Shown piece by piece: positions 1,157-63,471 of a stretch of DNA of 64,000 nucleotides (the stretch's first letter is position 1; each line of letters starts with the position of its first letter). Made by a program: the position numbers and the translations under genes. The stretch spans positions 62,001 through 126,000 of the IMG/VR virus record IMGVR_UViG_3300049215_000529; one strand, 5' to 3'. Under the pieces are notes generated by a model, which searched no databases, was not told where the DNA came from, and saw only the letters and a list, made by a program, of their open reading frames with translations.

Positions 1157-1456
1157 TTATATATCAGCAAATGCGCTCCTCAATGCGCTCGTCATAACCA
1201 AACCATTAATCCTTTTAACTTCTGCTCCATCTACTAAAATCAAAACACTAGGAATTGATTCTATATTGAAGCGACGACATAATCCTTTAAAATGGTCTAC
1301 ATCTATGGCAAAGAATCCAATGTCTTTATGTTTTTCTTCTATCTTTTCAATTATATTAAGCATTTTCTTATGAAAAGGCATCCAGGATGCATAAAAATAG
1401 ATGGATTGCACTTTTTTATTAAAAGTTAAATCGACTTCTTGAGTTAAAAACAACAT
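1157..1456 (-). CDS. thioredoxin-fold protein lacking CXXC
   Basis: FYASW-MPFH in place of WCxxC; IDVD...FNIESIPS...GAEVKRING thioredoxin pattern. Confidence 0.75.
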   Translation of the reverse strand: MLFLTQEVDLTFNKKVQSIYFYASWMPFHKKMLNIIEKIEEKHKDIGFFAIDVDHFKGLCRRFNIESIPSVLILVDGAEVKRINGLVMTSALRSAFADI

Positions 1457-1689
1457 CAGTTATCGGTGCTTTTCTTGTTAAGATTTTTGATAATTTCATC
1501 AATATTACCGGAAACTTGTGCCTTTTCTAAAATAACTCTAGAAAGCTGATCATTCAATTTCTTTATTTCTTGATTAAGGGCGTCTTGTGTAACTACACCG
1601 GCAGCAATTAATACATTTTCAAGCGCTTTAAGTCTAATCAAAGCCTCAGCAACCAACATTTCACTTGGTAATTCTTTTTCTTTTTCCAT
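1456..1689 (-). CDS. hypothetical protein
   Basis: ORF track 1456..1710; GAAGG-preceded ATG at 1689 preferred. Confidence 0.6.
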   Translation of the reverse strand: MEKEKELPSEMLVAEALIRLKALENVLIAAGVVTQDALNQEIKKLNDQLSRVILEKAQVSGNIDEIIKNLNKKSTDN

Positions 1690-2228
1690 TATAATACCTT
1701 CCCGCAACACTTTTTATATTTCTTCCCAGAGCCACAAATGCATGGCTGATTAGGTCCCACCTTGGTTTTATTGATAACGGGCGCGATTTTAGGAATGGCA
1801 CGATCCATAAACAAAGTGGAACTAAGATGATCAATTTCGTGCTGGCATACCACTGCCAATAAGCCAGTTGCTACGAAACTGTACGGCTCTACTAAATTGT
1901 TAGTAACATGTACTTCTTGAAAACGGGTGGTGTCTTCTGTGCGACCAGGAAAAGATAAACATCCCTCCTGTCTAAACATCAGGGGATCATATCCATTTTG
2001 GATTTTAGCATTCACTAAATTTAGGTCCAATCCTTTACCCAGCCTGATAATTGCAATATTTTTAGCAATACCTATTTGTGGCGCCGCTAACCCAATGCCA
2101 CCCTTACCCAATCGGTTGGCTTGATTAAGCTCATTTTCTAGAGTAGCAATTAAGGAACCCACTTCATCAAGTGAAACATCCTCACATTTGACGCGGAGCG
2201 CCTCTTCATTATTCGTAATAATCATCAC
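1689..2228 (-). CDS. def: peptide deformylase with C-terminal SEC-C zinc motif
   Basis: [19 protein letters not shown] motifs; C-terminal [18 protein letters not shown]. Confidence 0.93.
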
Positions 2229-2247
2229 TTACCTATATATCAGTTGC

Positions 2248-2454
2248 CTATTTTCTACCGCCACACCCACAACCTCTGTGTCGGTTCCTCTCCGCAGCAC
2301 TTATTATTCTTTTGAGGCAGGCGGCGCATTGCTTGTTGTTTGCAGAACAAACTTCGCATAGCACAGCTATTGATATAAAAACAGTCTGTTGACAGCGGAC
2401 ACAAGCCTTCTTAGTATTGACAGAAGCGAGCTTAGAACAATTTTCGCATAACAT
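2248..2454 (-). CDS. small Cys-rich zinc-finger protein
   Basis: four CxxC pairs plus C-terminal GCGCG in 68 aa. Confidence 0.65.
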   Translation of the reverse strand: MLCENCSKLASVNTKKACVRCQQTVFISIAVLCEVCSANNKQCAACLKRIISAAERNRHRGCGCGGRK

Positions 2455-2499
2455 AGTGATCCTTATTACTATGCAGGCATATTAACTATGGAGGTTAGC

Positions 2500-2655
2500 A
2501 TGGATATCTTTGACCCTTTGTATGATCCTAAGATCCAACAAAAGAAAGAGTGGGAACCTGAACCTCTATACATCGAACTGGGACCGCCGCCACCAGTAGA
2601 GAAAAAGAAAGACGAAGAGGAAACGCCTCGCGTCATTATCATAGAAATATTATGA
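2500..2655 (+). CDS. small Pro/acidic protein (51 aa; not in ORF track)
   Basis: GGAGG then ATG; MDIFDPLYDPKIQQKKEWEPEPLYIELGPPPPVEKKKDEEETPRVIIIEIL. Confidence 0.6.
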   Translation: MDIFDPLYDPKIQQKKEWEPEPLYIELGPPPPVEKKKDEEETPRVIIIEIL

Positions 2656-2799
2656 TGTGCGCCAGTTTATCTCAAAACTAACCGCATACTTGCCGGGCAC
2701 TTTCCACCATGCAACTCTAAAGAATGCAAATTGGATTTTGTTTACACCTATCCACTTGAATCCGAAACGATTCAGTGTCAATTCAAAATCAACAACCAT
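2650..2799 (-). CDS. small aromatic-rich protein (49 aa; not in ORF track)
   Basis: AAGG then ATG directly after 2805..3050; MVVDFELTLNRFGFKWIG...EINWRTS. Confidence 0.5.
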   Translation of the reverse strand: MVVDFELTLNRFGFKWIGVNKIQFAFFRVAWWKVPGKYAVSFEINWRTS

Positions 2800-2804
2800 T
2801 AACC

Positions 2805-3050
2805 TTATTTCTTTCTAGAATCAAGAATATCTTGTACTTCACCAAATAATTGACGAGTACCAGAAGCTTTCAAATAGCCATTTACGATCTCACGAACCTG
2901 ACGATAGTCTTCGGCTGGATCAGAACTCTCAAGGCATGCTTGGCAAACCTTAAAAGAGGTGACGTTGATTTTAGACAAAGCGACGCTTTCCAGCTCGTCT
3001 GGGTCAAATTCATTGGCACAAATTATGCAGTTACAGCTTACCGAGGTCAT
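2805..3050 (-). CDS. small zinc-binding hypothetical protein
   Basis: CIIC and CQAC pairs; CCGATATATA motif 9 nt upstream. Confidence 0.65.
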   Translation of the reverse strand: MTSVSCNCIICANEFDPDELESVALSKINVTSFKVCQACLESSDPAEDYRQVREIVNGYLKASGTRQLFGEVQDILDSRKK

Positions 3051-3102
3051 GGTCCATCCTATATATCGGGAGACTATATAGTATTCGGTAATATTGCATG
3101 AT

Positions 3103-3137
3103 TGAAGGAGTTAATGTAAGTTACATTAACTCCTTCA
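3103..3137. terminator. 17-bp perfect inverted repeat, probable terminator
   Basis: TGAAGGAGTTAATGTAA-G-TTACATTAACTCCTTCA followed by TTTTT on + strand. Confidence 0.55.
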
Positions 3138-3182
3138 TTTTTGATGCTTTAATCACTATTCCATTAGAAATGGTGAATTTTA

Positions 3183-3695
3183 TTAGGAATTACCCAAGAA
3201 ATCATCCCAATCTGGATGCCAATGCTCTTGTGGGTCAGCAACATAATGCTGTGCAGAAAAAGATGGATGGGTAGGTCTCTTTAGCAATACCATGCTAGCT
3301 TGTTCTGGCGTTCTATCTGCCTTTTTGTTGTTACAAATCTGGCAACAAACTACACAGTTAGTGAAGGACGTGATGCCTCCCTGTGCTCTTGGCAGAACAT
3401 GGTCGATGGTAATTTGGGACGCAGTTAGCTTCTTACCACAGTATTGGCAAGTGCTTCTGTCTCTTTTAACCAAAGCTTTACGGCTGAAATTAGAATTGAA
3501 GTAATTTCTTTTAACGTGATTCTTCAATCTCAAAACAGATGGGTGCTTAATCTTTCCTTGACCCCAAACGATCTTGTCATCCCAATTGGAAATGACTTCA
3601 ACCTTGTCTTTGAACAAAAGTTTGAAGACCTTGCGCTCAGGTATAAATGCGATCACTTCATAAGACGCATTAAGTAATAACGTTTTCTTATTCAT
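3183..3695 (-). CDS. HNH endonuclease (McrA-like)
   Basis: RDRSTCQYCG...TIDHVLPRAQGG...NCVVCCQICNNKK. Confidence 0.9.
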   Translation of the reverse strand: MNKKTLLLNASYEVIAFIPERKVFKLLFKDKVEVISNWDDKIVWGQGKIKHPSVLRLKNHVKRNYFNSNFSRKALVKRDRSTCQYCGKKLTASQITIDHVLPRAQGGITSFTNCVVCCQICNNKKADRTPEQASMVLLKRPTHPSFSAQHYVADPQEHWHPDWDDFLGNS

Positions 3696-4434
3696 CTTCT
3701 ATTGCCATCGATTAGATTTTGCTTTGCTGATAGCGGGCGTAAATTATTCAACGCCCAACACTTTTTGAAATTGTCGTCTTCCATACTTGAATATGGCAAT
3801 GAGGAATGTGGAATTATATGATCTATATTCCAAGTCCATGTTGTAGGAGCATTATCGTCCCAATTTTTACGATCATACTTCCCTTGATTATCCCATGTCA
3901 TCCACGGCTCAAACTGTTTTTCTTTTTCAAGAAACCAAATATGGCGGTAGATAAGTTCATCCTTAATCTAAAGAAAGGATCGGTATCATATCGTAGCTTT
4001 TGATTTTTATTTCTTTCTTCTTTGTGAGAGAGTCGATACTGTTCTCTTGTAGCCCTACACATCTCAAAATTATTTTCGTAATACTCTTTCTGATTTTCAA
4101 GAATGACTTCTTTGTTCTCTTCGTAATACTGTTTTCTATTTTCCTTCAGTTTATCCGCATTTTCAGTAGCATACTCACGAACTCGACTCTTTATTTCTTC
4201 TTTGTTTTCTTGGTAATACTTGGCATTCTTTTCTTTGAAGAGCGGCTTATTAGCTTCATAAATCGGTTTTTTATTGTCCTGATAATACTGTCTATCATAT
4301 TCTTGTTGTTCTGCTTTATGGTCATAACGATATTGTTTATCACAATCTTTACATTGCGATTTTAGATAGCCTTTACCGCCCTTACTAAAACAACTTTCAT
4401 CTTTTGGTAGCCCGCATTTAGAACAAATCTTCAT
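3692..4434 (-). pseudogene. HNH-type endonuclease split by an internal frameshifting deletion
   Basis: N-part 3898..4434 (CSKC, CKDC, YxExN repeats) and C-part 3692..3901 (WNIDHIIP...NLRPL); second frame reads EKQFEPWMTW at the junction; paralog at 23874 has about 25 extra aa here. Confidence 0.8.
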
Positions 4435-4889
4435 TTGATATTTGTTAGATCAATTACCGGCATACAAAACAATTTGCCATGCTTATCTCTGTGGCTTTCT
4501 TCGCCAAAATAAAATTCAATTGTTATTTTAGCTTGTGTTGGCTTTGTATCTGAGAATTTTTTCATTTCTACACTAGGCTCTACCAAACCCATTGATGTTG
4601 GTAGTCCATTTTCATTAAGATTTTCATAATCAAAACCTTCATATGGTATACCATTTGCCTCTTGTTGATAAGCACATGCTTCCAATGCCTTATCTACGAC
4701 ATCATGTACCGCTTTCTTAACTTGCTCTGAATTAATTATTGATTTAGGCATATTATCTAGTCCTTTTCTAATTAGAGTTCTAACCAGAGCAGAAAATGAG
4801 GTATGTTCTTTTTCTGATAATTTGCGAGCTAACTCTTCAATTTCTTGAATTGTCGCCTTATCAATTCTCAATAATTTTGGAATCAACAT
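4431..4889 (-). CDS. hypothetical protein with N-terminal ribbon-helix-helix-like segment
   Basis: LRID...IEELARK...SFSALVRTLIRKGL resembles CopG/RHH. Confidence 0.55.
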   Translation of the reverse strand: MLIPKLLRIDKATIQEIEELARKLSEKEHTSFSALVRTLIRKGLDNMPKSIINSEQVKKAVHDVVDKALEACAYQQEANGIPYEGFDYENLNENGLPTSMGLVEPSVEMKKFSDTKPTQAKITIEFYFGEESHRDKHGKLFCMPVIDLTNIK

Positions 4890-4905
4890 TTTTTCTCCGA
4901 TATAT

Positions 4906-4933
4906 ATTGTATATCGCTTTATTGATATGTCAA
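4906..4933 (-). promoter_or_regulatory. sigma70-like promoter TTGACA-N16-TACAAT with overlapping palindrome
   Basis: -35 at 4933-4928, -10 at 4911-4906; CGATATA-N5-TATATCG at 4898-4916. Confidence 0.65.
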
Positions 4934-5004
4934 ATTAAAAATAATTTGCCTTGACATGACGACACAATAATCCTTGGAAATTGAACGGTCAAGGGATACT
5001 AATA

Positions 5005-5733
5005 TTATAAATTAGCGAGTGAGTCCCTGATATCCTCGCCGTAACAAACCTCATTGCCTAAGCAAGTCCAGTCTGGACGAACACGACGAGCAAATAATTC
5101 AAGCTTATCACTCTTTGGAAACATAATCTCCAATGAATCCTGCAATGTCTCGGGCTTAGCTGAATGTTTCAAATTTTCAGCGAAACATACAGAGCGCTGA
5201 GATTTGTTGGCTAGTTGCTTGTATATCTTGTTATTGCTGGTTCCTATTAAACAAATTTCATGAGTCTGTCTAAATAAACGACCCATTCCAAAAGCTAATA
5301 CATTATCAAGTGATAATTCTTTAAAAGAGTTAATAAAATAATTTTGCCAAACCTTTAACTTATATTTATCACTATTAGAAACACCTGGTCGCTTTTCAAG
5401 TAAATAACCAGTTGATATTATATCTTTTAGGAGTCCTGGCAAAAAAGATTTAAACGATTCTTTTTTATTCTTAACCCAAATATAAGTTTGTTTATGATGG
5501 AAACCCCAAGCACTCATGGTATCTAAACCTTCTTGCAATAGCGAGGATGGAACCCATAAAGCCAAGATGCTACCAGAAGGCGAGATAAAGTCTTTTACTG
5601 GCAACTGCTTAATATCAGAAATTGACATGGTGCTGTAGTTAGCCTTGGCACCACGTTTAACATCTGACATCTTTAAAGAATCAGAAAACGACCACGGCGG
5701 GTCTGCAACTATAACCCCAAATTTCTTACTCAT
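5005..5733 (-). CDS. MT-A70 family N6-adenine methyltransferase
   Basis: VIVADPPWSF, LALWV, HSAKPE, LELFARR. Confidence 0.88.
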   Translation of the reverse strand: MSKKFGVIVADPPWSFSDSLKMSDVKRGAKANYSTMSISDIKQLPVKDFISPSGSILALWVPSSLLQEGLDTMSAWGFHHKQTYIWVKNKKESFKSFLPGLLKDIISTGYLLEKRPGVSNSDKYKLKVWQNYFINSFKELSLDNVLAFGMGRLFRQTHEICLIGTSNNKIYKQLANKSQRSVCFAENLKHSAKPETLQDSLEIMFPKSDKLELFARRVRPDWTCLGNEVCYGEDIRDSLANL

Positions 5734-5746
5734 ATGTAAACCTAAA

Positions 5747-6565
5747 TTATGACTTAATAATCATGACTTGTAACTCCAATGGAGATACGCTGCCATCAAC
5801 TTCAACATCTTGAACTGCTTCAATCTTTTCTTTGGTTAAAGACTCTCGTTTGCGAACAGTGACTCTATATCCGCCAATAGGTAAAGCAGCTTGCCATTTA
5901 CCAGTTCCATTGGTTCTAGTTTTAGAAACCGTCTCTCCACTTGAGTGAGAAACAATCTCTACATCCGCCAAAAACACGGAGTTACCACTTTTATTAACTA
6001 CACGTTGTTGAACTGGAATAGCATTTTGCGCTAAAGCTGGATGTGCTAATTTAGTTTTAGTTGGCGCTGTTTTGTTGGTAGCTTCGGGTGGAACAAAAGC
6101 TTCCGCTTGTGGACCTCTTCCTGGTGGTGCCTTAGGAAGTTGAACTGGATATTTGTGAGTTTCTTCTGGTTCGGATTTTGGTAAATAAGCATTATCGCCC
6201 TCAAAAGTTTCTGGCCTAGAAGTTCTCCTAAATCCTTTTGGAGAATTCTCTAGTGGCAGTTTATTATCTGCAGAAATGGGAACTCGTCTTTCAGGATCAA
6301 ATGGTATGTTAGAACCTTGCTTTTCAGAATCAAGTGGAACGCTCTGGTTTTGATAGCGCCAAGTTTGCGGCGGAACCTGTACAGCCTCTACCGTAATTTT
6401 TGGTGGACCAGCTGATAGTTTTTCCACAATCTGCATTACTTCATTTAACTTATTAGAAACGATCTTAAGACTTAAATCTTGAGAGCGAACAATACCAATT
6501 AGAACCTTAATATCAGATTCTAGTTCTAGCAACACATCAGAAGCTTTTCTTTTTTCGTCGGTCAT
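5747..6565 (-). CDS. hypothetical protein: coiled coil, Pro-rich linker, C-terminal beta-sandwich-like domain
   Basis: 272-aa ORF; C-terminal VVNKSG..LADVEIV..TNGTGKWQAALPIGGYRVTV resembles carboxypeptidase-regulatory-like folds. Confidence 0.65.
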   Translation of the reverse strand: MTDEKRKASDVLLELESDIKVLIGIVRSQDLSLKIVSNKLNEVMQIVEKLSAGPPKITVEAVQVPPQTWRYQNQSVPLDSEKQGSNIPFDPERRVPISADNKLPLENSPKGFRRTSRPETFEGDNAYLPKSEPEETHKYPVQLPKAPPGRGPQAEAFVPPEATNKTAPTKTKLAHPALAQNAIPVQQRVVNKSGNSVFLADVEIVSHSSGETVSKTRTNGTGKWQAALPIGGYRVTVRKRESLTKEKIEAVQDVEVDGSVSPLELQVMIIKS

Positions 6566-7310: not shown

Positions 7311-7688
7311 TTATTCTGGAGATACGCTAGACTTGGGGTGGCGCTTGAAAGAAGGCTTATTCTTTCTTTCGTAGAATTGATTTTGACCGGTTGAATCAAT
7401 TTCCAAACGCTTTCTCTTCATCTCGTTACGTTTTCTCCTGTGTTTATCAGATGGCTTCTCGTAAGACTGCTTCTCTTTATAGGTAGAGAGAATGCGTTCT
7501 TTTTGAACGAGGGCTCTAAAGGCGCGGAGGGCTTTGTCAAAATTACCGTGGTAAACTTTGACTTCTAGTGGTTGTGCTTGCACTGGTTGGATATGTGCAA
7601 ATTTGTCGTTGACTTCGACTTGGCTCGATTCACCTCCCCTCGGTGCCTTTTTAAAGTTCTTTCTCGATTTCTTATAATTATCTTTCAT
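7311..7688 (-). CDS. rpsU: ribosomal protein bS21 with N- and C-terminal extensions
   Basis: core VKVYHGNFDKALRAFRALVQKERILSTYKEKQSYEKPSDKHRRKR. Confidence 0.85.
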   Translation of the reverse strand: MKDNYKKSRKNFKKAPRGGESSQVEVNDKFAHIQPVQAQPLEVKVYHGNFDKALRAFRALVQKERILSTYKEKQSYEKPSDKHRRKRNEMKRKRLEIDSTGQNQFYERKNKPSFKRHPKSSVSPE

Positions 7689-20088: not shown

Positions 20089-20134
20089 GGTTCCGTAATA
20101 TATAACTACTCCCCCTATAAGATCCCCCATTCAT

Positions 20135-23103: not shown

Positions 23104-23142
23104 GATACCTCAAATAGGAAATAACAATCAACAACTATTATA

Positions 23143-23892
23143 TCACATCTGAGTGATTCCGTGTTCCTTTTGATAGAAAAAATGATTGACATAGCTTATA
23201 GATTCATGAGTTCCAGCATCGCTCCATAAACCATTAACCATACTGTAATGAAGATTATCAGCCTCTAGATATTTTCTAATAATATCTGTAATTTCATATT
23301 CACCACGTGCACTAGGCTTTAGTTCTTTGAAGTACTCAAAGAAAACTGGAGTAAACAAATAACATCCAGAGATTGCCATGTTAGTAAATTGCGGGTCTAA
23401 TGACTTAGGCTTTTCTTCAATTTTGACAATTTTATTATTATCATCTATGGAGGCAACACCAAAGCGCGTTAAAGAGGGATGATTTGCCAGCATAATTTGG
23501 GCACGCGGATGAGTTTTCCAGTTAGGATTATTCCAACGTGGAGCCTTCTCAAACACATTGTCTCCCAAGATGACGGAAAAATCAACATCATCTCTAACGA
23601 ATCTTTCGCACAAGCTGATTGCGTGAGCGATTCCCTTGGGCTCAGGCTGGTAAACGTAATTAAAATTCATTCCATAACGACTACCATCGCCAAGATAACC
23701 CACTACTTGGGAGAAGTGATTGCCACCCAAAATAACGGTAACGTCTTGACAACCCAATTGTTTCAGGGTATCAATAGGATAATCTATAATGAACTTTCCA
23801 TTAAGATCTAATAGATGTTTATTAACTACACTAGTGAGTGGGGCTAGACGAGAGCCAGTTCCGCCTGCGAGAATTATACCATTTTTTGCCAT
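23143..23892 (-). CDS. rmlA: glucose-1-phosphate thymidylyltransferase
   Basis: GIILAGGTGSRLAPLT, QPEPKGIAHA, ILGDN, SARGEYEITD, WSDAGT. Confidence 0.9.
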   Translation of the reverse strand: MAKNGIILAGGTGSRLAPLTSVVNKHLLDLNGKFIIDYPIDTLKQLGCQDVTVILGGNHFSQVVGYLGDGSRYGMNFNYVYQPEPKGIAHAISLCERFVRDDVDFSVILGDNVFEKAPRWNNPNWKTHPRAQIMLANHPSLTRFGVASIDDNNKIVKIEEKPKSLDPQFTNMAISGCYLFTPVFFEYFKELKPSARGEYEITDIIRKYLEADNLHYSMVNGLWSDAGTHESISYVNHFFYQKEHGITQM

Positions 23893-24598: not shown

Positions 24599-24725
24599 GA
24601 TCTCCAAAGCAGAAAGCCAACCACTTCAGTGGTTGGATGAATGCGTTAGCAGTTATTTGTCAGATAGATATTATTTTTATTTGAATATATACAGCTTCTG
24701 ATATATACATGTCAGAAGGTAATGT

Positions 24726-26386: not shown

Positions 26387-26923
26387 TTATGCCTTTTGTT
26401 TAGTAGGCATAACTATCATACTCATAAATTTACCTTCCAAGGAAGTTGAGGGCGCAGGGGCAATCAAGCCAGCTAACTGCTGCAAAATCCAGTCCATCTT
26501 ATCCCTGCCTACTTGAGGATGGGTAATCTCACGACCACGGAAGCGAATAGTAAACTTAACTTTATGTCCCTCTGCCAAAAATTCTTTGGCTTGCTGAAGC
26601 TTGTGGTTCAAGTCATTCTCATCAGTATTGGGACGGAAAGTGAGTTCTTTCAATTCCTGAAGCCTTTGATTTTTCTTGGCTTCAGCCATTTTCTTTTTTT
26701 CTTCGTACTTATACTTACCGTAATCCATAATCTTACAGACAGGCGGAACAGCTCTTGGATTAATTTCTACCAAATCTAGGACTTGATCTTGAGCCATCTT
26801 AAGTGCATCACGTGTTGCCATGACGCCAGCATTGGTTCCATCGCTTAAAACCACACGAATTTGTGGGATGCGGATTTGATTGTTAATACGAATTCTTTGA
26901 TTAGTTGTTTGTGCGTTACTCAC
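26387..26923 (-). CDS. infC: translation initiation factor IF-3
   Basis: RINNQIR, DLVEINP..PPVCKIMDYGKYKYE, KELTFRPNTDENDL, GHKVKFTIRFRGRE. Confidence 0.95.
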   Translation of the reverse strand: MSNAQTTNQRIRINNQIRIPQIRVVLSDGTNAGVMATRDALKMAQDQVLDLVEINPRAVPPVCKIMDYGKYKYEEKKKMAEAKKNQRLQELKELTFRPNTDENDLNHKLQQAKEFLAEGHKVKFTIRFRGREITHPQVGRDKMDWILQQLAGLIAPAPSTSLEGKFMSMIVMPTKQKA

Positions 26924-28773: not shown

Positions 28774-28847
28774 GGAGCTGATGATCGGTACTGCCCCGAT
28801 GCTATCTCGTTACGAGTGAGATGTTCTGCTATTTAAACTACATCAGC
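28773..28847 (-). tRNA. tRNA-Thr(CGT) with non-canonical GGCAGTA T-loop
   Basis: GCTGATG/CATCAGC-T-CCA, loop CT-CGT-AA, T arm ATCGG-GGCAGTA-CCGAT. Confidence 0.85.
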
Positions 28848-29477: not shown

Positions 29478-29518
29478 ATGAATGAATATATCAGCTAATT
29501 TTAGGATTCGAACTTTAT

Positions 29519-29728: not shown

Positions 29729-29740
29729 TTACGTGTACAT

Positions 29741-29768
29741 ATTATAACACTTTATTCCCATGTGTCAA
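29741..29768 (-). promoter_or_regulatory. consensus sigma70 promoter TTGACA-N16-TATAAT for the tRNA/tmRNA run
   Basis: perfect hexamers, -10 ends 12 nt before the first tRNA. Confidence 0.8.
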
Positions 29769-30572: not shown

Positions 30573-30587
30573 GATAATGAATATAAC

Positions 30588-37543: not shown

Positions 37544-37557
37544 TTAATGGAACTAAT

Positions 37558-44511: not shown

Positions 44512-44579
44512 GTTATGTCCTTTACATCGAAAATGTGGATATATACATAGATAGCAAGCTATTGAAATTGAGGCATTAA

Positions 44580-45497
44580 ATGAGTATTTGTTTAGTTACT
44601 GGTGGAGCGGGATTCATTGGTAGTCATATTGTTGACTCTCTCATTGATAAGGGTCATCAGGTAGTAATTATAGACAATCTTGTTACTGGAAATATCAAGA
44701 ATCTTAATCCTAGAGCTACCTTTTACCAGCAAAACGTCATCAATCCTCTAAATTATATTTTCGATAAATTCAAATTTGATTATGTTTTTCATTTAGCTGC
44801 ACAAATTAATCTAAGACATTCCATCAAAGAACCGGCTGAAGACGCTCTAGCCAATGTAGTTGGCAGCCTCAACATCCTTGAAAATTGCGCGCGCGCTAAT
44901 GTAAAACGAGTCATCTTTTCTTCCACGGGCGGAGCCATCTATTCGCCCCATGAAATTTTACCATTTACCGAACAATCCCTGGCATATCCGGAGTCGCCTT
45001 ATGGCTTAGCAAAACAAACAGTAGAGAAGTATTTGGAAATTTTTCAAAAACTATATGGTCTACAATATACGGTATTAAGATACAGCAATGTTTTTGGTCC
45101 CCGTCAAGATAGCAAGGGTGAAGCTGGCGTCATCGCTATTTTCATCCAAAGAGCGCTTGCGGACGAAGATTTGACCATCTTTGGAGATGGAAAGCAGACC
45201 AGAGACTTTGTTTATGTGCAAGATGTAGTTCAGGCGAATATGTTAGCATTAGAGCAAGAACTGAATGGTACTTTTAATGTCAGCTCTAATTTACAATACA
45301 GTGTGAATGATGTTGCTCAAAAGATAGTTCAATATATTCCGACATCCTCTAAAATTGTTCATACAGCGCCTATTGTTGGAGAATTACTGTACACTCAATT
45401 AAGTGCCGAAAAATTAAAAGCCAGAGGGTGGAATAATTTCTGGTCTCTAGATAATGGAATAGTTGAAACGATCAAGTATTTTGATGATTTGATATAA
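44580..45497 (+). CDS. NAD-dependent epimerase/dehydratase (GalE-like SDR)
   Basis: VTGGAGFIGSH, HLAAQ, SSTGGAIY, YGLAK, LRYSNVFGPRQ. Confidence 0.9.
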   Translation: MSICLVTGGAGFIGSHIVDSLIDKGHQVVIIDNLVTGNIKNLNPRATFYQQNVINPLNYIFDKFKFDYVFHLAAQINLRHSIKEPAEDALANVVGSLNILENCARANVKRVIFSSTGGAIYSPHEILPFTEQSLAYPESPYGLAKQTVEKYLEIFQKLYGLQYTVLRYSNVFGPRQDSKGEAGVIAIFIQRALADEDLTIFGDGKQTRDFVYVQDVVQANMLALEQELNGTFNVSSNLQYSVNDVAQKIVQYIPTSSKIVHTAPIVGELLYTQLSAEKLKARGWNNFWSLDNGIVETIKYFDDLI

Positions 45498-45517
45498 TCA
45501 AGATAAAGGAATATTAA

Positions 45518-46519
45518 ATGGCACCTACGGCTTGCATTACTGGAATTACTGGACAAACTGGATCATATTTATGTGAATTACTCTTAGAAAAGGGATATCA
45601 GATATACGGTCTTAAAAGACGCAGCTCTTCATTTAATACAGAAAGATTAAATCATGTATATGAAGATCCACATGCTGATAGTAAACTAAAATTGGTTTAT
45701 GGTGATTTGTCTGACTTCTCTTCTTTATCTAGTTTAGTTGCTGAGGTGAAGCCTGATTTATTTTTTAATCTTGCAGCTCAAAGTCACGTGCGTGTTAGCT
45801 TTGATATTCCAGAGTATACGATGGATGTTACCGGAACTGGCGTAATAAGAGCGCTTGAAGCTATTCATAAGCACAGCCCTCAAACCAAATTTTTAACGGC
45901 ATCAAGCTCTGAAATGTTTGGTTCCACTCCTCCACCCCAAAGCGAGACCACACCATTTCATCCTCGCTCTCCATACGGAGTCGCCAAAGTGGCAGGCTTT
46001 TGGGCAACCACCAATTACCGCGAATCTTATGGAATGCATGCCTGTAATGCTATTTCTTTCAATCATGAATCTGGCAGGCGCGGAGAGACCTTCGTTACCC
46101 GTAAAATTACTATGGCAGCGACCAGAATCAAGCTTGGTTTACAAGACAAGCTCTATTTAGGAAATTTGGAAGCTAAGCGAGACTGGTCTCACGCCGCCGA
46201 TGTGGCTGATGCAATGTTTAAAATTATCACAGCGCCAGAGCCAGATGATTATGTGGTAGCCAGTGGCGAGATGCATTCAGTGCGCGAGTTTGCTGAAATG
46301 GTCTTCAACAAGCTTGATTTGGATTATTCTAAATATGTAGAATTTGACGCAAGATATTTGAGACCAGCCGAAGTTGATGCTTTGTGCGGGGATCCTACCA
46401 AATTAAAAACTAAATTAGGATGGCAGCCAAAGTATACCTTTGAACAGCTCGTCGATGAGATGATTGCTTCTGATATGGAACTGGCTCGTCAAGAAAAGAT
46501 CTTAAAGGACAACAAATGA
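45518..46519 (+). CDS. gmd: GDP-mannose 4,6-dehydratase
   Basis: [48 protein letters not shown]. Confidence 0.95.
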
Positions 46520-47457
46520 AAATCTTGGTCACGGGTGGCACTGGTTTTCTTGGAAAGCACGTAGTACCAAAATTAAAAGAGCAGCATGAGGTTTGGGCAC
46601 CTTCAAGCAAAGAAGTAAATGTACTAGACTTCTACGCACTTAATCATGCTGTAGTGCAGTCTGGTCCAGATGTAATTTTACATATGGCTGCCAAATGTGC
46701 GGGTATCCTTGGTAACCGCATCAATCCAGCTGACTTTTTAAGAGATAATACTCAAATGGGTCTCAATGTTTATGAAGTTGCCCGTATTTTAAAAATAGAG
46801 ACAGTTTATACTTTGGGTTCAGTATGTGCTTATCCAAAATTTTGTCCAGCCCCATTCAAAGAGGAAAACATTTGGAATGGTGCAGCAGAGGAAACAAACT
46901 TCCCATATGGTCAAGCCAAAAGAACGCTAATGATGTTAGGGCAAACTTATCGCCAACAATACGGCATGAAAGGCGCTCACCTTATTCCTGTAAATATGTA
47001 TGGAGAGTATGACACATTCGATCCAACTTACAGTCATGTTATTCCGGCACTTATTCGTAAATTTGAAGAGGCGATCCGCAATGATAGCGGAGTTGTTAAA
47101 TGCTGGGGAACTGGTGAAGCTACCAGAGAATTCTTGTACGCTGGCGACTGCTCTGAAGCCATTTTAAAAGCCGTAAACGACGGACTCGATACCGATTTAC
47201 CAATTAATCTTGGAGTTGGCAAGGATATTTCTATTAAAGATCTGGCTCATTTGGTCGGGCATCTGACTGGATTTCAAGGAGAAATCGTCTTCACGAATGA
47301 GGTGTCAGATGGGCAGCCTAAGAGAATGTTAGATGTTTCCCGCGCTAAAGAAATGCTTGGCTGGGCAGCAAAGACAGACTTTAAAGACGGACTACTTCGT
47401 GTCATTCAATGGTATCGAGATAATAGAGACCGGGTTATTGCGCAGGACGTTTCTTAA
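46516..47457 (+). CDS. fcl: GDP-L-fucose synthase
   Basis: [53 protein letters not shown]. Confidence 0.9.
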
Positions 47458-49859: not shown

Positions 49860-50103
49860 TCCTCTTTAATTCTTCTTTCTTTGATGGGTCAGGATCATCG
49901 AACACAATTTTGGTTCTACCCTCATGTCCATGAATAAATTGAACGTCTGCGAGACTGTTGTATAGGTTGGTGCTTGAATGCGCTCCAAACCATTCCAAGG
50001 CAACTTTGCCATCGGAGAATACACAACCCTCAGCAACAACTCCACAACCACTTACTCCAGACGCATCTTCCAGTCTTTCAAAATGAAATCTACGCATTCC
50101 CAT
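49849..50103 (-). CDS. hypothetical protein
   Basis: 84 aa, overlaps neighbour start. Confidence 0.65.
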   Translation of the reverse strand: MGMRRFHFERLEDASGVSGCGVVAEGCVFSDGKVALEWFGAHSSTNLYNSLADVQFIHGHEGRTKIVFDDPDPSKKEELKRNGN

Positions 50104-50172
50104 TTTATTATCCTTGTTCCCCCTCGCCTCAATATCTCAATATTCACATAATAAGCACGAGGCGTCCGGTAG

Positions 50173-50895: not shown

Positions 50896-51495
50896 ATGAA
50901 AATTCAAAATCTTCTTCTAATTTTCACCCATATTGTAAGTATTTTAAGTCTAGGTATACTTTTTAATTTCGTAGTAGAAATTTACGATCCAACCTATCCT
51001 AATGTGGTTCATAAGACTTTATACATAGAAAGAAATTTTAATCAAGATGAAGTGGCTATGATTACTAATGCAGCAATCGCATGGACTCAAGCAACTCATC
51101 ATATTGCTGAAATTAATGTTGTTACTTTGCCTACATCTGAAAAGATGGATTTAATAAATGGCATTGTAGTGCTTAAAGAAACCTCTGACTTTCCAGAAAT
51201 TATCGTTTTAGACGGCGCCAATGAGAATTCTACAGTTGGGTATTGCAACAAACACGGAGTTATCCCATACATCGCATTAGTGTCTGACAGATTAAAGGAT
51301 GACGACGATGAATTTCAAACGGTAATTATACATGAACTGGGGCATGCACTCGGTCTACAGCACACCCACGGAATAGCTGGTATGAATTCAGTTATGTATC
51401 CAAATGTACTGGTGAGTGCCGACCACATTACTTCGTTAGATTTGGAACAGTTTTGCTCATTATATCATTGCGACGCTAACAAGTTAAAGAACTAA
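50896..51495 (+). CDS. matrixin-like (metzincin) metalloprotease with N-terminal TM/signal
   Basis: HELGHALGLQH and SVMYP Met-turn. Confidence 0.85.
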   Translation: MKIQNLLLIFTHIVSILSLGILFNFVVEIYDPTYPNVVHKTLYIERNFNQDEVAMITNAAIAWTQATHHIAEINVVTLPTSEKMDLINGIVVLKETSDFPEIIVLDGANENSTVGYCNKHGVIPYIALVSDRLKDDDDEFQTVIIHELGHALGLQHTHGIAGMNSVMYPNVLVSADHITSLDLEQFCSLYHCDANKLKN

Positions 51496-52197
51496 AAAGA
51501 ACTTCTTCATCTTAGAACGCCTAACATATTTTGCAAATTTTTTGATCTCATTTATATTATCAGAATCCAAAACTACTTGCTCTATTTTTTCTACATTAGC
51601 TAGCTTGATCTTTTCAGCAAATAACTTCATGTAAGTGAATGAACCTGATTCAATAATAAGATTTTCTATCTGTTCAATATCTTTTGGATTAGTCAAATGC
51701 TTGGCGAGTTCAAATAAATATCTTGGTTTCTTGGACGAGATTATAATATCTTTAAATTTGTTGACGCTAGATCCCCTAACATGCTTTAGAAACATGTGAG
51801 CATATTTGACATTCTTAGATTTAAGAATGATAGATTCGAGTGGTTTACGATCCGCATTCTTCACAAAACAAGCAAATCTACAAATATACTTTGTCTTTTT
51901 AGACTCAACTACAACATGCCGCAATGCTTTGACATCACAATTGCGAATGTTTTGGGCAAACAATAGAGCATACTTGGCATTCTTATTATCTAAGATTACT
52001 TTCTGCATTCGATGAGGTTTGAAGCCATATTCAAATGCAAAAAAATAAGCCAGGGCTGAATCATTGTTTCTTATGATTTCTTCTTGAACCTTGTCCAATA
52101 CTTCATCTAAATTGTTATGGGCAGTAATCTTTTCACATTTCTGCGCCCATCTTAAAGAATCAGCACTATAGTCCCTTTCAAATAAGTATTTACTCAT
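51484..52197 (-). CDS. helical-repeat hypothetical protein
   Basis: repeated Y(A/I)xxFA units; CTGATATATA 7 nt upstream. Confidence 0.7.
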   Translation of the reverse strand: MSKYLFERDYSADSLRWAQKCEKITAHNNLDEVLDKVQEEIIRNNDSALAYFFAFEYGFKPHRMQKVILDNKNAKYALLFAQNIRNCDVKALRHVVVESKKTKYICRFACFVKNADRKPLESIILKSKNVKYAHMFLKHVRGSSVNKFKDIIISSKKPRYLFELAKHLTNPKDIEQIENLIIESGSFTYMKLFAEKIKLANVEKIEQVVLDSDNINEIKKFAKYVRRSKMKKFFLVL

Positions 52198-52220
52198 ACC
52201 TATTTATATATCAGGGGCTA

Positions 52221-60251: not shown

Positions 60252-60301
60252 GCTTTTCTCTGAGATATCATATGACTATATATCTCAGCCCCAATCACAC
60301 A

Positions 60302-61309: not shown

Positions 61310-61312
61310 AAT

Positions 61313-61537
61313 TTAATTATATAGTACTTTTTGCTCTTTTATATCGTGCAATATTTCTGGAATGAAGAATGGAGAATCATACACTTGAACAGCAACTTCT
61401 GCTTGGTCATTGCCTTCCTTTTTTGCTTGTTTGAGAAACTCGGTCAAATCATGATTGGCAGCTTCCTGAGAGATAGCCAATGATACCAAGTGCCACGCTG
61501 CTTTCGGTCTGCTCTTCAAATAGATCCCATGAATCAT
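61313..61537 (-). CDS. hypothetical protein
   Basis: AAGGA upstream; 74 aa. Confidence 0.6.
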   Translation of the reverse strand: MIHGIYLKSRPKAAWHLVSLAISQEAANHDLTEFLKQAKKEGNDQAEVAVQVYDSPFFIPEILHDIKEQKVLYN

Positions 61538-61545
61538 ATCATTCC

Positions 61546-61887
61546 TTATACGCTAAAAGAGTGTCCACATCCACACTGGCTTTTAACATTAGGATTCAAG
61601 AACTTAAATCCCTGATTCATTAGAGATTGTTCCCAATCTAATGTACAGCCATCCAAATACAGAATGCTTTTGCGATCCACTATTAAGTGAATGCCTTCTA
61701 CTTCAAAAACTAAATCTTTAGATTTAGAAGCATCCTCATATTGTAAAACATATGAGAAGCCAGAGCAGCCTCCACCCTTAACACCTAACCTTACACATGC
61801 ATTAGGAGTTCCTCGGGCAACAAGTTGCTTAGTAATTTGTTCAGCAGCTAGGGCTGAAACAAAGACTTGGTACTTCTCTACTTCCAT
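61546..61887 (-). CDS. iscA: A-type Fe-S carrier (IscA/SufA/HesB)
   Basis: VRLGVKGGGCSGFSY, GFKFLNPN, CGCGHSF. Confidence 0.92.
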   Translation of the reverse strand: MEVEKYQVFVSALAAEQITKQLVARGTPNACVRLGVKGGGCSGFSYVLQYEDASKSKDLVFEVEGIHLIVDRKSILYLDGCTLDWEQSLMNQGFKFLNPNVKSQCGCGHSFSV

Positions 61888-61905
61888 CTTATTAATGCAA
61901 CTTTA

Positions 61906-62268
61906 TTATCTTTTTGCCTTCTTAGGGGCTTCTTCCTGAGCTGCCACCATATTTGGAATGGCATCGATACGAGTCTTCAAATTATCTTCAAAGATTGCTT
62001 TGTCAGCATGAAGAAACTCAATACGCTCTACTAACTTTTGGACCATCTCATCAGATAGGTTGTGGGCATTGTCGGTTATGAACTTTTCAATGTCCTTAGC
62101 GCTATCTGATGTGAGTTTGACTCTGGCAATCTTATCAGAATCAGAAATGTCACTCTTGCGTTTGCGAAAAGATTTCCATCTATCCGAAAGAGAGTCTGAG
62201 ATGAAAACATCCCACATTAAGATGGCAGCGCCGACTCCGAAAACTATTTCAATAATATGTTCCAACAT
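61906..62268 (-). CDS. membrane-anchored hypothetical protein
   Basis: N-terminal TM, soluble tail. Confidence 0.6.
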   Translation of the reverse strand: MLEHIIEIVFGVGAAILMWDVFISDSLSDRWKSFRKRKSDISDSDKIARVKLTSDSAKDIEKFITDNAHNLSDEMVQKLVERIEFLHADKAIFEDNLKTRIDAIPNMVAAQEEAPKKAKR

Positions 62269-62269
62269 G

Positions 62270-63424
62270 TTACCCTACTAATCGATTAATCATTTTTTGT
62301 ACGTTATACCAAGAGTACTTCGATAGAGATTTCTCTACCAGTTCAATGCACAGCTTATCTAGCTTCTCTTTGTCAGGAGTCTTAGGTAGAACATTAGTGC
62401 TGTTGTATAATGAGTTGAGTTCTTTATCTTCTCTCTCAGCAAATTCAATTAACTGATCATAACTCCAAGCACCATTACGAATGGATAGTAGTTCCTCGCG
62501 GTCGGGACGTTTGACGACTACTTTTCCAGTGGTCAGAACCTCACGACACATACGAATCAATCGAACCAAATGATAGGCATGCTTGGTGTCATAGCCATAT
62601 TTCTCTTCTAAGGCAGAGCGGGTTGGGTTACGAGTCTTCTTCCAGTTTTGATACTGATCCCACTCACGCTTAGCGTTGGTATACATACGCTCGCGCTGCA
62701 TGAGTTCAATGAAATTGTCATCGAGACCAATCTTACGAGCCGCACTCATCCAGTGCTGATCGGCAGTAATCTTCAGCTCTGCTAACATTTCGGTGACTGT
62801 AGTTCGGATACCAATCTTCTGAGATTCTTCGAGTCCTTCCATAAAATCGAACTGGAATCGGTCTAACTCCTTCTGGATCTCCGCGCTAGCAGCTGCAAGC
62901 TGACCCGCATCAATTAGAGTGGTTTCCGGTAATCCAAAGCCAGTTCGTGTCGGCTCATCGACCGGAGGAGTCATAATCCATCGTTTGTGGGTCTTAATTC
63001 TCTTTAGCTGTGAAACAGAGTAGCCAAGGAAGGTATGCTTGATTTTCTTTGATAGGAAGTCATCTTTATGTTCCAGAATAACTTCACCAATGGAATCAAC
63101 GACGAAGTGGTCGCTAGGATCTGTATGTAGAACCTCTACAATATTTGGATTGCTATCTGCTGCCAAGTTAAAAAATTTTCGTATATCGTAAATTACTGCA
63201 TCCGGATCTGGTGCTTTTAACTCTGCTTGTTCAAATCTTTTGGTATAACCAAAAAAATATTCTTTGGTAGGAATACAAACACCTTTAAAATCCTCATCAG
63301 AGGTAGCGACATTAGTTCCATATGCATGGCTACCATGCCTCACTAAGAGGCAGGTGCCTTTAGTAATCCACGATAAATGTGGAGAATTTTTCACAATAGT
63401 ATCTAAAACGGGATGATTTTGCAT
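62270..63424 (-). CDS. Pol-beta superfamily nucleotidyltransferase (RlaP/PF10127-like)
   Basis: HGSHAYGTNVATSDEDFKGV, NPNIVEVL, YDTKHAYHLVRL. Confidence 0.85.
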   Translation of the reverse strand: MQNHPVLDTIVKNSPHLSWITKGTCLLVRHGSHAYGTNVATSDEDFKGVCIPTKEYFFGYTKRFEQAELKAPDPDAVIYDIRKFFNLAADSNPNIVEVLHTDPSDHFVVDSIGEVILEHKDDFLSKKIKHTFLGYSVSQLKRIKTHKRWIMTPPVDEPTRTGFGLPETTLIDAGQLAAASAEIQKELDRFQFDFMEGLEESQKIGIRTTVTEMLAELKITADQHWMSAARKIGLDDNFIELMQRERMYTNAKREWDQYQNWKKTRNPTRSALEEKYGYDTKHAYHLVRLIRMCREVLTTGKVVVKRPDREELLSIRNGAWSYDQLIEFAEREDKELNSLYNSTNVLPKTPDKEKLDKLCIELVEKSLSKYSWYNVQKMINRLVG

Positions 63425-63471
63425 TATTCTATCAATTCTAACCCATGCTATATATCGCTAGGGTTGCAATC

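What the first reader, a model, noticed from the sequence alone, without database searches (positions are those of the whole stretch)
1158..63458. Recurrent CTGATATATA-like motif upstream of genes: candidate element-specific promoter, possibly making leaderless mRNAs
Seen: CTGATATATA at 1158-1167, 2234-2243, 52205-52214 (all -) and 24698-24707 (+); variants at 3060-3069, 20097-20106, 29485-29494, 60277-60286, 63449-63458 (-) and 44536-44545 (+). Six copies sit 7-9 nt before an ATG with no -35 box. Inference: a T4-late-like single-box promoter; at that spacing +1 would fall on or near the start codon, which may connect to the encoded IF3 and bS21.
Basis: partly seen in the sequence, partly recalled or inferred. 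Interest (0 to 1): 0.6.

Follow-up and report, generated by a model that had tools for sequence, protein, structure and literature searches.

The report
Single-box promoter of a huge phage
A short conserved DNA word (core GATATATA) in front of genes and tRNAs of an uncultivated ~450-kb peat/moss phage is almost certainly a promoter that needs no -35 box, and at several genes it sits so close to the ATG that the mRNA would have essentially no leader.

Summary
All listed copies are at the stated coordinates, and six sit 7-9 nt before an ATG. The conserved unit is an 8-mer, G-[A/T]-TATA-[A/T]-[A/T], not the 10-mer; the leading CT is not conserved in relatives.

In intergenic DNA, GATATATA occurs 13 times in the sense of the downstream gene. 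Dinucleotide shuffles give 1.3-1.5, and the opposite orientation has 1. Two complete relatives (452 and 480 kb) reproduce this. Orthologous genes at 63-80% protein identity keep the motif and its spacing while the flanks diverge.

The motif also lies 9-15 nt before tRNA 5' ends, so it is a transcription signal rather than a ribosome signal. Only 5 of 138 sites have a TTGACA-like -35.

Across three genomes, an ATG opening a long ORF follows at 6-9 nt in 33 cases against 11.5 expected (p=1.6e-7). GTG and TTG show no such peak, and these sites almost never carry a Shine-Dalgarno.

Reading: a single-element promoter with a leaderless subset.

The T4-late label is not supported: no gp55 or gp45 homologue was found. 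This phage and its relatives encode a sigma70-family factor, which is the likeliest reader but unproven.

The IF3/bS21 link is unsupported. No transcript 5' ends could be obtained.

The parts
52205..52212 (-). GATATATA box, 7 nt before the ATG (52197) of a 237-aa gene (51484-52197). This is the best leaderless candidate in the window.
   Evidence: In 11 orthologous loci GATATAT and the ATG are invariant, the spacing is 6-7 nt, and the upstream sequence is unalignable.
2234..2241 (-). GATATATA box, 8 nt before the ATG (2225) of peptide deformylase (1689-2225). A GTG lies at 5 nt.
   Evidence: The Pfam Pep_deformylase match starts at residue 2, which supports this start. Most of 35 relatives keep [G/T]ATATA plus about 7-11 nt plus ATG.
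3060..3067 (-). GATATATA box, 9 nt before the ATG (3050) of an 81-aa gene (2805-3050).
   Evidence: The orthologue in G003 has GATATATA plus 9 nt plus ATG.
29485..29492 (-). GATATATT box, 7 nt before the ATG (29477) of a 214-aa HNH-like gene. It lies 26 nt after tRNA-Thr.
   Evidence: A longer ORF would run into the tRNA, so 29477 is the first usable ATG.
30580..30587 (-). GTTATATT box, 7 nt before the ATG (30572) of a 261-aa gene (29787-30572).
   Evidence: The G003 orthologue has GTTATATT plus 7 nt plus ATG. G001 has GGTATATT plus 9 nt.
1158..1165 (-). GATATATA box, 8 nt before the ATG at 1149. The case is ambiguous: an in-frame ATG at 1125 is preceded by GGAG, which would give a leader of about 25 nt.
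   Evidence: The N-terminus is not conserved in relatives, where alignment begins at residue 36-47, but the box is conserved in G003.
20099..20106 (-). Whether the downstream ORF is a real gene is uncertain.
   Evidence: The Bac_DNA_binding hit is weak, E 0.0019. A TTGACT-N16-TATATT promoter lies at 19823-19796 inside the ORF.
24700..24707 (+). GATATATA box, 18 nt before the ATG (24726) of an IS200-type transposase. The short leader holds AAGG.
   Evidence: The transposase has no counterpart in G001 or G003.
44538..44545 (+). GATATATA box, 34 nt before the ATG (44580) of an NAD-dependent epimerase. Leadered, with a GAGG Shine-Dalgarno.
60277..60284 (-). GATATATA box, 25 nt before the ATG (60251) of an AAA ATPase. 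Leadered.
   Evidence: G003 keeps GTTATATA at 25 nt. G001 has GTTATATG at 7 nt.
63449..63456 (-). GATATATA box, 24 nt before the ATG (63424) of an RlaP-type nucleotidyltransferase. Leadered.
23137..23144 (-). GATATAAT box, 33 nt before the ATG (23103) of a 301-aa gene. Leadered, with GAGG.
45491..45498 (+). GATATAAT box, 19 nt before the ATG (45518) of a 333-aa gene. The short leader holds AAGGA.
26387..26923 (-). Phage IF3 gene.
   Evidence: IF3_C, 94.4 bits.
7311..7688 (-). Phage bS21 gene.
   Evidence: Ribosomal_S21, 54.1 bits.

Best explanation
The element G-[A/T]-TATA-[A/T]-[A/T], most often GATATATA, is the single recognition box of a promoter class. The class is shared by a clade of uncultivated ~450-480 kb phages from peat and moss. 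The box acts like a -10 element with a conserved G at -14 and needs no -35 hexamer.

RNA polymerase is host core enzyme, because no phage RNAP subunit was found. It opens the DNA at the box and starts about 5-9 nt downstream.

Three arrangements occur:
- At tRNA genes the start gives a precursor with a leader of a few nt.
- At many protein genes it gives a 15-45 nt leader that carries a normal Shine-Dalgarno.
- At a subset the ATG lies 6-9 nt after the box, so the transcript begins at or within about 0-4 nt of the AUG and must be translated as a leaderless mRNA. There are 5-7 such genes in this window and 33 in three genomes.

The most likely specificity subunit is the phage's own ~210-aa sigma70-family factor. 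It is encoded about 89 kb beyond the left end of this record, on an overlapping contig that is 100% identical where sampled, and in all five complete relatives. The host primary sigma working in extended -10 mode is the main alternative.

Shown: the motif, its orientation, its spacing and its conservation; the absence of a -35; the lack of SD in the subset; the presence of a sigma gene.
Inferred: that it is a promoter, where transcription starts, and which sigma reads it.
For: Enrichment and strand:
- GATATA and GATATATA are the top upstream k-mers (replicated in G003).
- Intergenic sense counts against shuffles are 13 vs 1.5 (G000), 17 vs 2.7 (G003) and 9 vs 3.2 (G001). Opposite-orientation counts are 1, 1 and 0.
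- Intergenic density is 30-70 times the coding density.

Transcription rather than translation:
- The same box lies 9-15 nt before mature tRNA 5' ends in three genomes.
- It also lies 15-45 nt before SD-led genes.

Register as a -10 element:
- G is preferred two bases before TATATA, in 20 of 32 cases.
- Versions without the G show no spacing peak.
- The few sites that do have TTGACA have it at spacing 16, the same as the phage's separate TTGAC[AT]-N16-TAnnnT class.

Leaderless geometry:
- ATG at 6-9 nt occurs 33 times against 11.5 expected, p=1.6e-7, with a peak at 7.
- There is no peak for GTG or TTG, or for reversed or scrambled controls.
- An SD-like 4-mer is present in 3 of 33 candidates, against 46% of all genes and 53% of leadered motif genes.
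- tRNA 5' ends at 9 nt or more cap how far downstream the start can lie.
- A -19.7 kcal/mol hairpin (z -4.6) followed by a U-rich tract lies 13 nt upstream of the box of the RuvC-like gene at genome 42019. Its G003 orthologue has a -20 kcal/mol hairpin plus T5 lying 10 nt upstream of the box. Only about 24-28 nt therefore remain in which to re-initiate before the ATG.

Conservation: orthologous footprints are seen.

Sigma:
- TIGR02937 scores over its cut-off in G001-G005 and in G007. G007 is 100% identical to this record over three sampled loci.
- No RNAP beta subunit was found.
- The dominant hexamer TATATA has A where sigma70 -10 boxes have T. The phage's own -35-type promoters have T there in 71% of cases. 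This fits a non-host specificity.

Precedents:
- phiEco32 gp36 uses a single-element promoter, tAATGTAtA, with starts 6-8 bp downstream (PMC8948821).
- P23-45 middle and late promoters are of the extended -10 type (PMC7403470).
Against: - No transcript 5' end was observed. The only RNA data are sparse metatranscriptome contigs, which cannot show starts. One of them (2983-3133) runs across the 3060 box.
- Host and infection timing are unknown.
- Motif-bearing genes are not one functional or temporal class, and motif sites are interspersed with TTGACA-type promoters. A dedicated sigma regulon is therefore not demonstrated.
- The phage sigma shows a weak region-4 match, which would normally go with a -35 contact.
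- The sigma gene itself is preceded by ATCAATA-N6-TATACA, not by an obvious host-type promoter.
- Some near-ATG cases have alternative starts, as at 1158.
- My gene calls are crude: an ORF and codon-usage heuristic that gave 81% coding density in G003 (the G001 figure was not printed).
- Only 2 of 33 candidates had a clear upstream terminator by my scan, so most of these genes may also be read from upstream transcripts.
Confidence: 0.62

Rival explanations
1. These are ordinary host-sigma70 promoters of the extended -10 class, not element-specific. The host primary sigma reads G(-14) plus TATAWW through regions 3.0 and 2.4, and the phage sigma plays no part.
For: - G sits at the position of the G in the extended -10 TGn element, and T is weakly preferred before it, about 40%.
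- The family includes perfect TGATATAAT boxes, one with TTGACA at 16 nt before tRNA-Gly.
- The genes served look early or metabolic.
- The spacing to TTGACA equals that of the phage's -35-type class.
Against: - The most enriched and most conserved form, TATATA, has A at -7, where sigma70-type recognition strongly prefers T. It is invariant in 11 orthologous promoters.
- T at -15 is not conserved.
- The motif is weak or not strand-biased in the more distant relatives G004 and G005. This argues for a lineage-specific reader, although those phages may simply have other hosts.
Confidence: 0.3
2. The box is the binding site of a phage transcription regulator, for example the 146-aa region-4/HTH protein. 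In this reading it is an operator next to weak promoters rather than the -10 element itself.
For: - A conserved 146-aa HTH protein is encoded in this record and in its relatives, and carries a box upstream of its own gene.
- The sequence is nearly palindromic (ATATAT).
Against: - The fixed distance to tRNA 5' ends and to ATGs, the strict orientation (13:1), and the requirement for the flanking G fit a polymerase start signal better than an operator.
- No separate -10 box is visible between the motif and the near ATGs.
Confidence: 0.08
3. It is an RNA-level signal: either a Shine-Dalgarno-independent ribosome-binding or enhancer sequence, perhaps used with phage bS21, or an endonuclease processing site that creates leaderless and tRNA-precursor ends.
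For: - In the near-ATG class the box occupies -15 to -8, where an SD would sit, and those genes lack an SD.
- The phage encodes bS21, IF3 and tmRNA.
Against: - The same box precedes tRNA genes, and also lies 15-45 nt upstream of genes that have their own SD. A ribosome-binding role does not explain either placement.
- Resemblance to a -10 box with a -14 G, and occasional pairing with TTGACA at 16 nt, are DNA-level features.
- A processing site cannot be excluded from sequence alone.
Confidence: 0.06
4. It is a chance or compositional effect of AT-rich intergenic DNA.
For: Intergenic DNA is AT-rich. TATAAT is only about 2.7-fold denser there than in coding DNA, and the 10-mer with one mismatch is not enriched.
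Against: - Dinucleotide-preserving shuffles of the intergenic segments never reach the observed counts for the exact GATATATA 8-mer in any of the three genomes; for the degenerate G[AT]TATAWW pattern in G001 the shuffle maximum (41) exceeds the observed 39.
- The orientation bias is 13:1.
- The spacing peak has p=1.6e-7 with flat controls.
- Orthologous positions are conserved.
Confidence: 0.02

Closest known systems
phiEco32 middle/late promoters read by the phage sigma gp36
   Same: - A single conserved 8-9 bp element near -10 ending in TATA-like bases, with no -35.
- Host core RNAP with a phage-encoded sigma70-family factor.
- Starts 6-8 bp downstream of the element (PMC8948821), the same window that the tRNA and ATG spacings imply here.
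   Different: - The consensus differs: tAATGTAtA against GATATATA.
- gp36 lacks region 4, while the factor here has a weak region-4 match.
- The phage here is about 6 times larger and unrelated.
- Reading by the phage sigma is not shown here.
- A leaderless subset is not a described feature of phiEco32 in the paper read.
Extended -10 promoters, for example the middle/late promoters of Thermus phage P23-45 used with the -35-blocking protein gp39
   Same: - The -10 box with an upstream G-containing extension works without a -35.
- The phage also has separate -35/-10 promoters, so a switch between classes is conceivable (PMC7403470).
- From my own memory, not checked because the paper is not held: many P23-45 middle and late transcripts are leaderless.
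   Different: - T at -15 is not conserved.
- The dominant hexamer has A at -7.
- No gp39-like factor was identified.
- The host sigma is unknown.
T4 late promoters (TATAAATA; gp55, gp33, gp45)
   Same: An 8-bp AT-rich single box at -10, no -35, A at the position equivalent to -7, and a start a few bp downstream.
   Different: - The sequence differs at three positions.
- No gp55 or gp45 homologue was detected.
- The box is not restricted to late or structural genes.
- T4 late mRNAs are leadered with an SD (my own knowledge).
Leaderless genes predicted from a -10-like box about 6-10 nt upstream of the start codon (Actinobacteria, Deinococcus-Thermus and others)
   Same: A TA-rich -10-like signal at a fixed short distance from an ATG, and no SD (PMC3160421; PMC4611024 for the AUG requirement).
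   Different: Here the signal is a longer, phage-lineage-specific 8-mer. Only a minority of genes use it this way, and most genes in the same genome have an SD.

Membership tests
T4-type late promoter system | Box TATAAATA centred near -10 | tested here: not met
   The consensus is G[A/T]TATA[A/T][A/T], dominated by GATATATA. The single-box architecture is the same but the sequence is different.
T4-type late promoter system | gp55-type sigma and gp45 sliding-clamp activator encoded by the phage | tested here: not met
   phmmer with T4 gp55 and gp45 against all six-frame ORFs of at least 60 aa in G000, G001 and G003 gave no hit at E<=10. A single-sequence search has limited sensitivity. gp33 was not tested.
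T4-type late promoter system | Serves late (structural) genes | tested here: inconclusive
   Boxes precede tRNAs, PDF, exonuclease, RuvC-like, NadR-like and HTH genes, and also the portal gene. No timing data exist.
Extended -10 sigma70 promoter | TG at -15/-14 upstream of the -10 hexamer | tested here: inconclusive
   G at -14 is strongly preferred, in 20 of 32 TATATA sites. T at -15 is present in only about 40% and is not conserved in orthologues.
Extended -10 sigma70 promoter | Canonical -10 hexamer with A at -11 and T at -7 | tested here: not met
   A(-11) is present. The commonest and best-conserved form has A at -7 (intergenic GATATATA 14 against GATATAAT 6, GATATATT 3). The phage's -35-type promoters have T(-7) in 71%.
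Extended -10 sigma70 promoter | Functions without a -35 hexamer | tested here: met
   Only 5 of 138 sites have at least 5/6 of TTGACA at the proper spacing. There is no conserved upstream block in orthologous alignments. This shows sequence absence only, not function.
Phage-sigma single-element promoter (phiEco32 type) | Phage encodes a sigma70-family factor | tested here: met
   TIGR02937 scores over its cut-off in five complete relatives and in contig G007, which is 100% identical to this record over 16.5 kb sampled. It also matches phrog_351. The gene is not inside the 204-kb record itself.
Phage-sigma single-element promoter (phiEco32 type) | That sigma, with core RNAP, initiates at the box | not testable with these tools
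   This needs in vitro transcription or in vivo 5'-end mapping.
Leaderless mRNA | The transcript 5' end is at the start codon or within a few nt of it | not testable with these tools
   RNA runs hold only sparse contigs, 100% identical to the window, which cannot show ends. The geometry (box to ATG 6-9 nt, tRNA ends at 9 nt or more) implies a leader of 0-4 nt.
Leaderless mRNA | AUG start codon (GUG and UUG not tolerated) and no Shine-Dalgarno | tested here: met
   The spacing peak exists for ATG only: 33 against 11.5, compared with GTG 2 against 2.4 and TTG 4 against 3.7. An SD-like 4-mer occurs in 3 of 33 candidates against 46% of all genes. The AUG requirement is taken from PMC4611024.

The most novel reading that the evidence does not exclude
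The phage runs a private expression channel. Its own sigma factor drives GATATATA promoters, and a defined subset of these produces leaderless mRNAs. Translation of that subset is then tuned, switched on or off at a set time, by the phage-encoded initiation machinery (IF3, bS21, perhaps tmRNA). Transcription specificity and an SD-independent initiation mode would thus be coupled in one regulon of a huge phage.
Probability: 0.1. Interest if true: 0.8.

Novelty: new member of a known kind. Interest (0 to 1): 0.45.

Why it matters
Huge phages (over 200 kb) are known almost only from metagenomes. Their sigma factors, IF3, bS21 and tRNAs have been catalogued (PMC7162821), but how their genes are switched on is essentially unknown.

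This work gives a concrete, conserved promoter word for one ~450-480 kb clade. It also gives a second TTGACA-N16 class, and a list of genes predicted to be translated without a leader.

Those predictions are directly testable with recombinant phage sigma plus core RNAP, or with 5'-end-enriched metatranscriptomes. The motif also improves start-codon and operon annotation in these genomes. If the leaderless set proves real, the presence of a phage IF3, a factor reported to antagonise leaderless initiation, becomes a pointed question.

Tried and rejected
- Megablast of 5 kb against the phage collection found no match. A tblastn with the 593-aa protein found only distant topoisomerase I hits.
- My EM motif finder first drifted to SD+ATG and then inflated. 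I replaced it with k-mer enrichment and pattern counts.
- Host inference from IF3 failed. The best cellular matches are 42-52% identical and spread over Zixibacteria, Burkholderiaceae, Clostridia, Steroidobacter, Elusimicrobia and Chitinophagaceae, so no host could be called.
- RNA evidence was uninformative. Four metatranscriptome runs (two data sets, each filed twice) hold a few 150-240 nt contigs identical to window 1-6000. They carry no 5'-end information. One contig crosses the 3060 box and one crosses the 1158 box.
- Searches of the 204-kb record itself for Sigma70_r2 and for RNAP beta found nothing.
- The search for T4 gp55 and gp45 found nothing.
- A terminator directly upstream of near-ATG boxes was found by my scan in only 2 of 33 cases, plus one imperfect U-tract case. 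It is not a general feature.
- The P23-45 primary paper is not held, so its leaderless claim is cited from memory only.
- Motif sites and TTGACA-type sites are interspersed along G003, so genome position gives no temporal classes.
- No alternative genetic code was used.

Full report
**Setting.** The window is bases 62001-126000 of a 204,190-bp linear IMG/VR virus record. CheckV rates the record 47% complete. Its G+C is 39.5%. A simple ORF and codon-usage caller finds about 258 genes, 225 of them on the - strand. There are 32 tRNA genes, all on the - strand.

The record carries a portal, a large terminase, a DNA polymerase, an NAD-dependent ligase and a helicase. The window itself holds IF3 (26387-26923), bS21 (7311-7688), peptide deformylase and a tmRNA.

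Relatives are 350-480 kb contigs, one of them with terminal repeats. The DNA occurs in moss and peat metagenomes. This is therefore a fragment of an uncultivated huge phage.

**Observation.**
- The exact 10-mer occurs 4 times against 0.22 expected, and nowhere else in the record.
- With one mismatch the 10-mer is not enriched.
- The real unit is shorter. GATATA, GATATAT and GATATATA are the most over-represented 6-, 7- and 8-mers in the 60 nt upstream of ORFs: 29 vs 4.4, 16 vs 1.4 and 11 vs 0.64.
- Fourteen of the 18 GATATATA copies lie in the ~10% of the genome that is intergenic.
- Within intergenic segments, 13 copies point toward the downstream gene and 1 points the other way. Dinucleotide-preserving shuffles of the same segments give 1.3-1.5, with a maximum of 5.
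- The two bases before TATATA are GA in 14 of 32 cases, and G-N in 20 of 32.

**Replication and conservation.** I fetched two complete relatives, G003 (480 kb) and G001 (452 kb, terminal repeats).
- The same k-mers top the upstream enrichment list in G003.
- Intergenic sense counts against shuffles are 17 vs 2.7 in G003 and 9 vs 3.2 in G001. Opposite-orientation counts are 1 and 0.
- For the 237-aa gene behind the 52205 copy, 11 orthologous loci (63-75% protein identity) keep GATATAT and the ATG invariant, 6-7 nt apart. Everything further upstream is unalignable.
- The deformylase gene keeps [G/T]ATATA close to its ATG in most of 35 relatives.
- Orthologues of six further motif-bearing genes keep the box at the same or nearly the same distance.

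This is a phylogenetic footprint, not a compositional accident.

**What kind of signal.** The same box lies 9-15 nt upstream of the mature 5' end of the first tRNA of tRNA clusters in all three genomes. It also lies 15-45 nt upstream of protein genes that carry their own GGAG/GAGG/AAGG sequence.

A ribosome-binding role cannot explain either placement. A transcription start signal explains both.

The box looks like a -10 hexamer (TATAWW) preceded by the G of an extended -10 element. Only 5 of 138 sites have a TTGACA-like hexamer, and all five have it at a 16-nt spacing. That is the spacing used by a second, clearly separate promoter class in these phages, TTGAC[AT]-N16-TAnnnT, with 66 intergenic sites.

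**Leaderless geometry.** I counted, without any annotation, how often the box is followed at distance d by an ATG that opens at least 60 codons, in the three genomes together.
- d = 6-9 holds 33 cases against 11.5 expected from the other distances (Poisson p = 1.6e-7), with the peak at d = 7 (14 cases).
- Reversed, scrambled and G-less versions of the box show no peak.
- GTG (2 vs 2.4) and TTG (4 vs 3.7) show no peak either. This fits the reported rule that only AUG works at a 5' end (PMC4611024).
- The 33 candidates have an SD-like 4-mer in 3 cases. The figures for comparison are 46% of all genes, 53% of motif genes with longer leaders, and 18% of random 17-mers.

Bacterial polymerases start about 6-8 nt after a -10-type box; phiEco32 shows 6-8 bp (PMC8948821). 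The tRNA 5' ends at 9 nt or more set an upper bound here. Transcripts from these promoters would therefore carry 0-4 nt before the AUG.

In one case a strong hairpin (-19.7 kcal/mol, z = -4.6) with a U-rich tail lies 13 nt upstream of the box. This is the RuvC-like gene at genome 42019, outside the window. The G003 orthologue has a -20 kcal/mol hairpin plus T5 lying 10 nt upstream of the box. If upstream transcripts stop there, the gene can only be expressed from a start inside the last ~25 nt.

Within the window:
- The good candidates are the ATGs at 52197, 2225, 3050, 29477 and 30572.
- 1149 is ambiguous, because an SD-led in-frame ATG lies 24 nt downstream.
- The ORF behind 20097 is doubtful.

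**Which polymerase.** No RNAP beta-like gene occurs in the record or in five complete relatives, so host core enzyme is used.

All five complete relatives encode a 209-225 aa sigma70-family protein (TIGR02937 over its cut-off; phrog_351; weak Pfam region 2 and region 4 matches). They also encode a 146-162 aa protein with a region-4-like HTH. The 204-kb record holds the HTH gene (90% identical to the G003 copy) but not the sigma.

Contig G007, from the same sample series, is 100% identical to the record over three sampled loci. It carries the sigma gene about 89 kb beyond the record's left end. The window's phage therefore has its own sigma.

Whether that sigma or the host's primary sigma reads the box cannot be decided from sequence.
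- For the phage sigma: the dominant, invariant form has A at the position where sigma70-type -10 boxes have T. The phage's own -35-type promoters have T there in 71% of cases.
- For the host sigma: the G at -14, the inclusion of perfect TGATATAAT boxes, and the early-looking genes served.

I put about 0.45-0.5 on the phage sigma and about 0.3 on the host sigma.

**Comparison with known systems.** The architecture matches three described strategies:
- phage-sigma single-element promoters (phiEco32 gp36, tAATGTAtA; PMC8948821);
- extended -10 phage promoters used after -35 recognition is blocked (P23-45 gp39; PMC7403470);
- T4 late promoters.

Membership in the T4 late system fails. The box differs, no gp55 or gp45 homologue was found, and the genes are not specifically late.

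The IF3/bS21 idea has no support here. IF3 is reported to antagonise leaderless initiation (PMC4611024). Huge-phage IF3 and S21 have been discussed as general tools for redirecting translation (PMC7162821).

**Limits.**
- No transcript 5' ends were available. RNA runs hold only a few identical contigs.
- The host is unknown.
- Gene calls are heuristic.
- Most near-ATG genes may also be read from upstream transcripts.

**Verdict.** This is a real, conserved, lineage-specific single-box promoter with a probable leaderless subset. It is a new member of a known kind.

Noticed in passing
window 27921-28277 (-): A full-length tmRNA gene (Rfam RF00023, 96 bits) is encoded by the phage. A TTGACT hexamer lies about 25-40 nt upstream of it.
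   Followed up: partly
window 28776-28847 (-) and 29657-29728 (-): Two further tRNA-like genes were found by Rfam (44 and 41 bits) but not by ARAGORN. The second sits just downstream of a perfect TTGACA-N16-TATAAT promoter at about 29740-29768.
   Followed up: no
window 4906-4933 (-), 19796-19823 (-) and 29740-29768 (-); 66 sites in three genomes: A second promoter class is TTGAC[AT]-N16-TAnnnT. It is often preceded by CC and has a T-rich 'caattt' spacer. It looks like the host-sigma70 type and is interspersed with the GATATATA class.
   Followed up: partly
genome 199666 and 201657 (outside the window); L198 about 1290-1320; L096-L100; tRNA promoters of G003: An extra upstream element, (T)ATCAATA, lies 6 nt before the TATA hexamer at tRNA-cluster promoters. 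It is also present in front of the sigma-factor gene in all relatives examined. It may be a third promoter class or an activator site.
   Followed up: partly
window 24726-26137 (+): An IS200-type transposase (Y1_Tnp, E 3e-39) is followed by a 338-aa ORF that was not examined. The transposase has no counterpart in G001 or G003, so this is probably a recent insertion. An exact CTGATATATA copy lies 18 nt upstream of it.
   Followed up: partly
genome 199329-199420 (outside the window); G001 80119-80195; G003 172924-172997, 173183-173255 and 50073-50149: Suppressor-type tRNAs are present, with anticodon CTA in all three genomes and TTA in G003. Under code 11 my crude caller gives 89% coding density in G000 but only about 81% in G003. 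Stop-codon recoding in part of these genomes was not examined.
   Followed up: no
window 4897-4906 (+): This is the only GATATATA copy in the window that faces no gene. It is the reverse strand of the start region of the TTGACA-N16-TACAAT promoter of the gene at 4431-4889.
   Followed up: yes
whole record; contigs G006 (130 kb) and G007 (194 kb): Two other IMG/VR contigs of the same sample series are 100% identical to the record over all loci sampled, and G007 extends beyond its left end. The phage genome could be extended by merging them.
   Followed up: partly
window 31250-38334 (+) and 44580-47457 (+): These + strand islands encode sugar-modifying enzymes: an 801-aa methyltransferase/glycosyltransferase fusion and an NAD-dependent epimerase/dehydratase. 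The rest of the genome is almost entirely on the - strand.
   Followed up: no
window 1-6000: Metatranscriptome contigs from moss and plant samples are 100% identical to the window, with 0 differences. The same strain is therefore present in RNA libraries, although DNA carry-over cannot be excluded.
   Followed up: partly
window 1689-2225 (-): The phage peptide deformylase carries a C-terminal SEC-C zinc-binding motif (residues 159-176, E 2.5e-8), which is not a usual part of deformylases.
   Followed up: no
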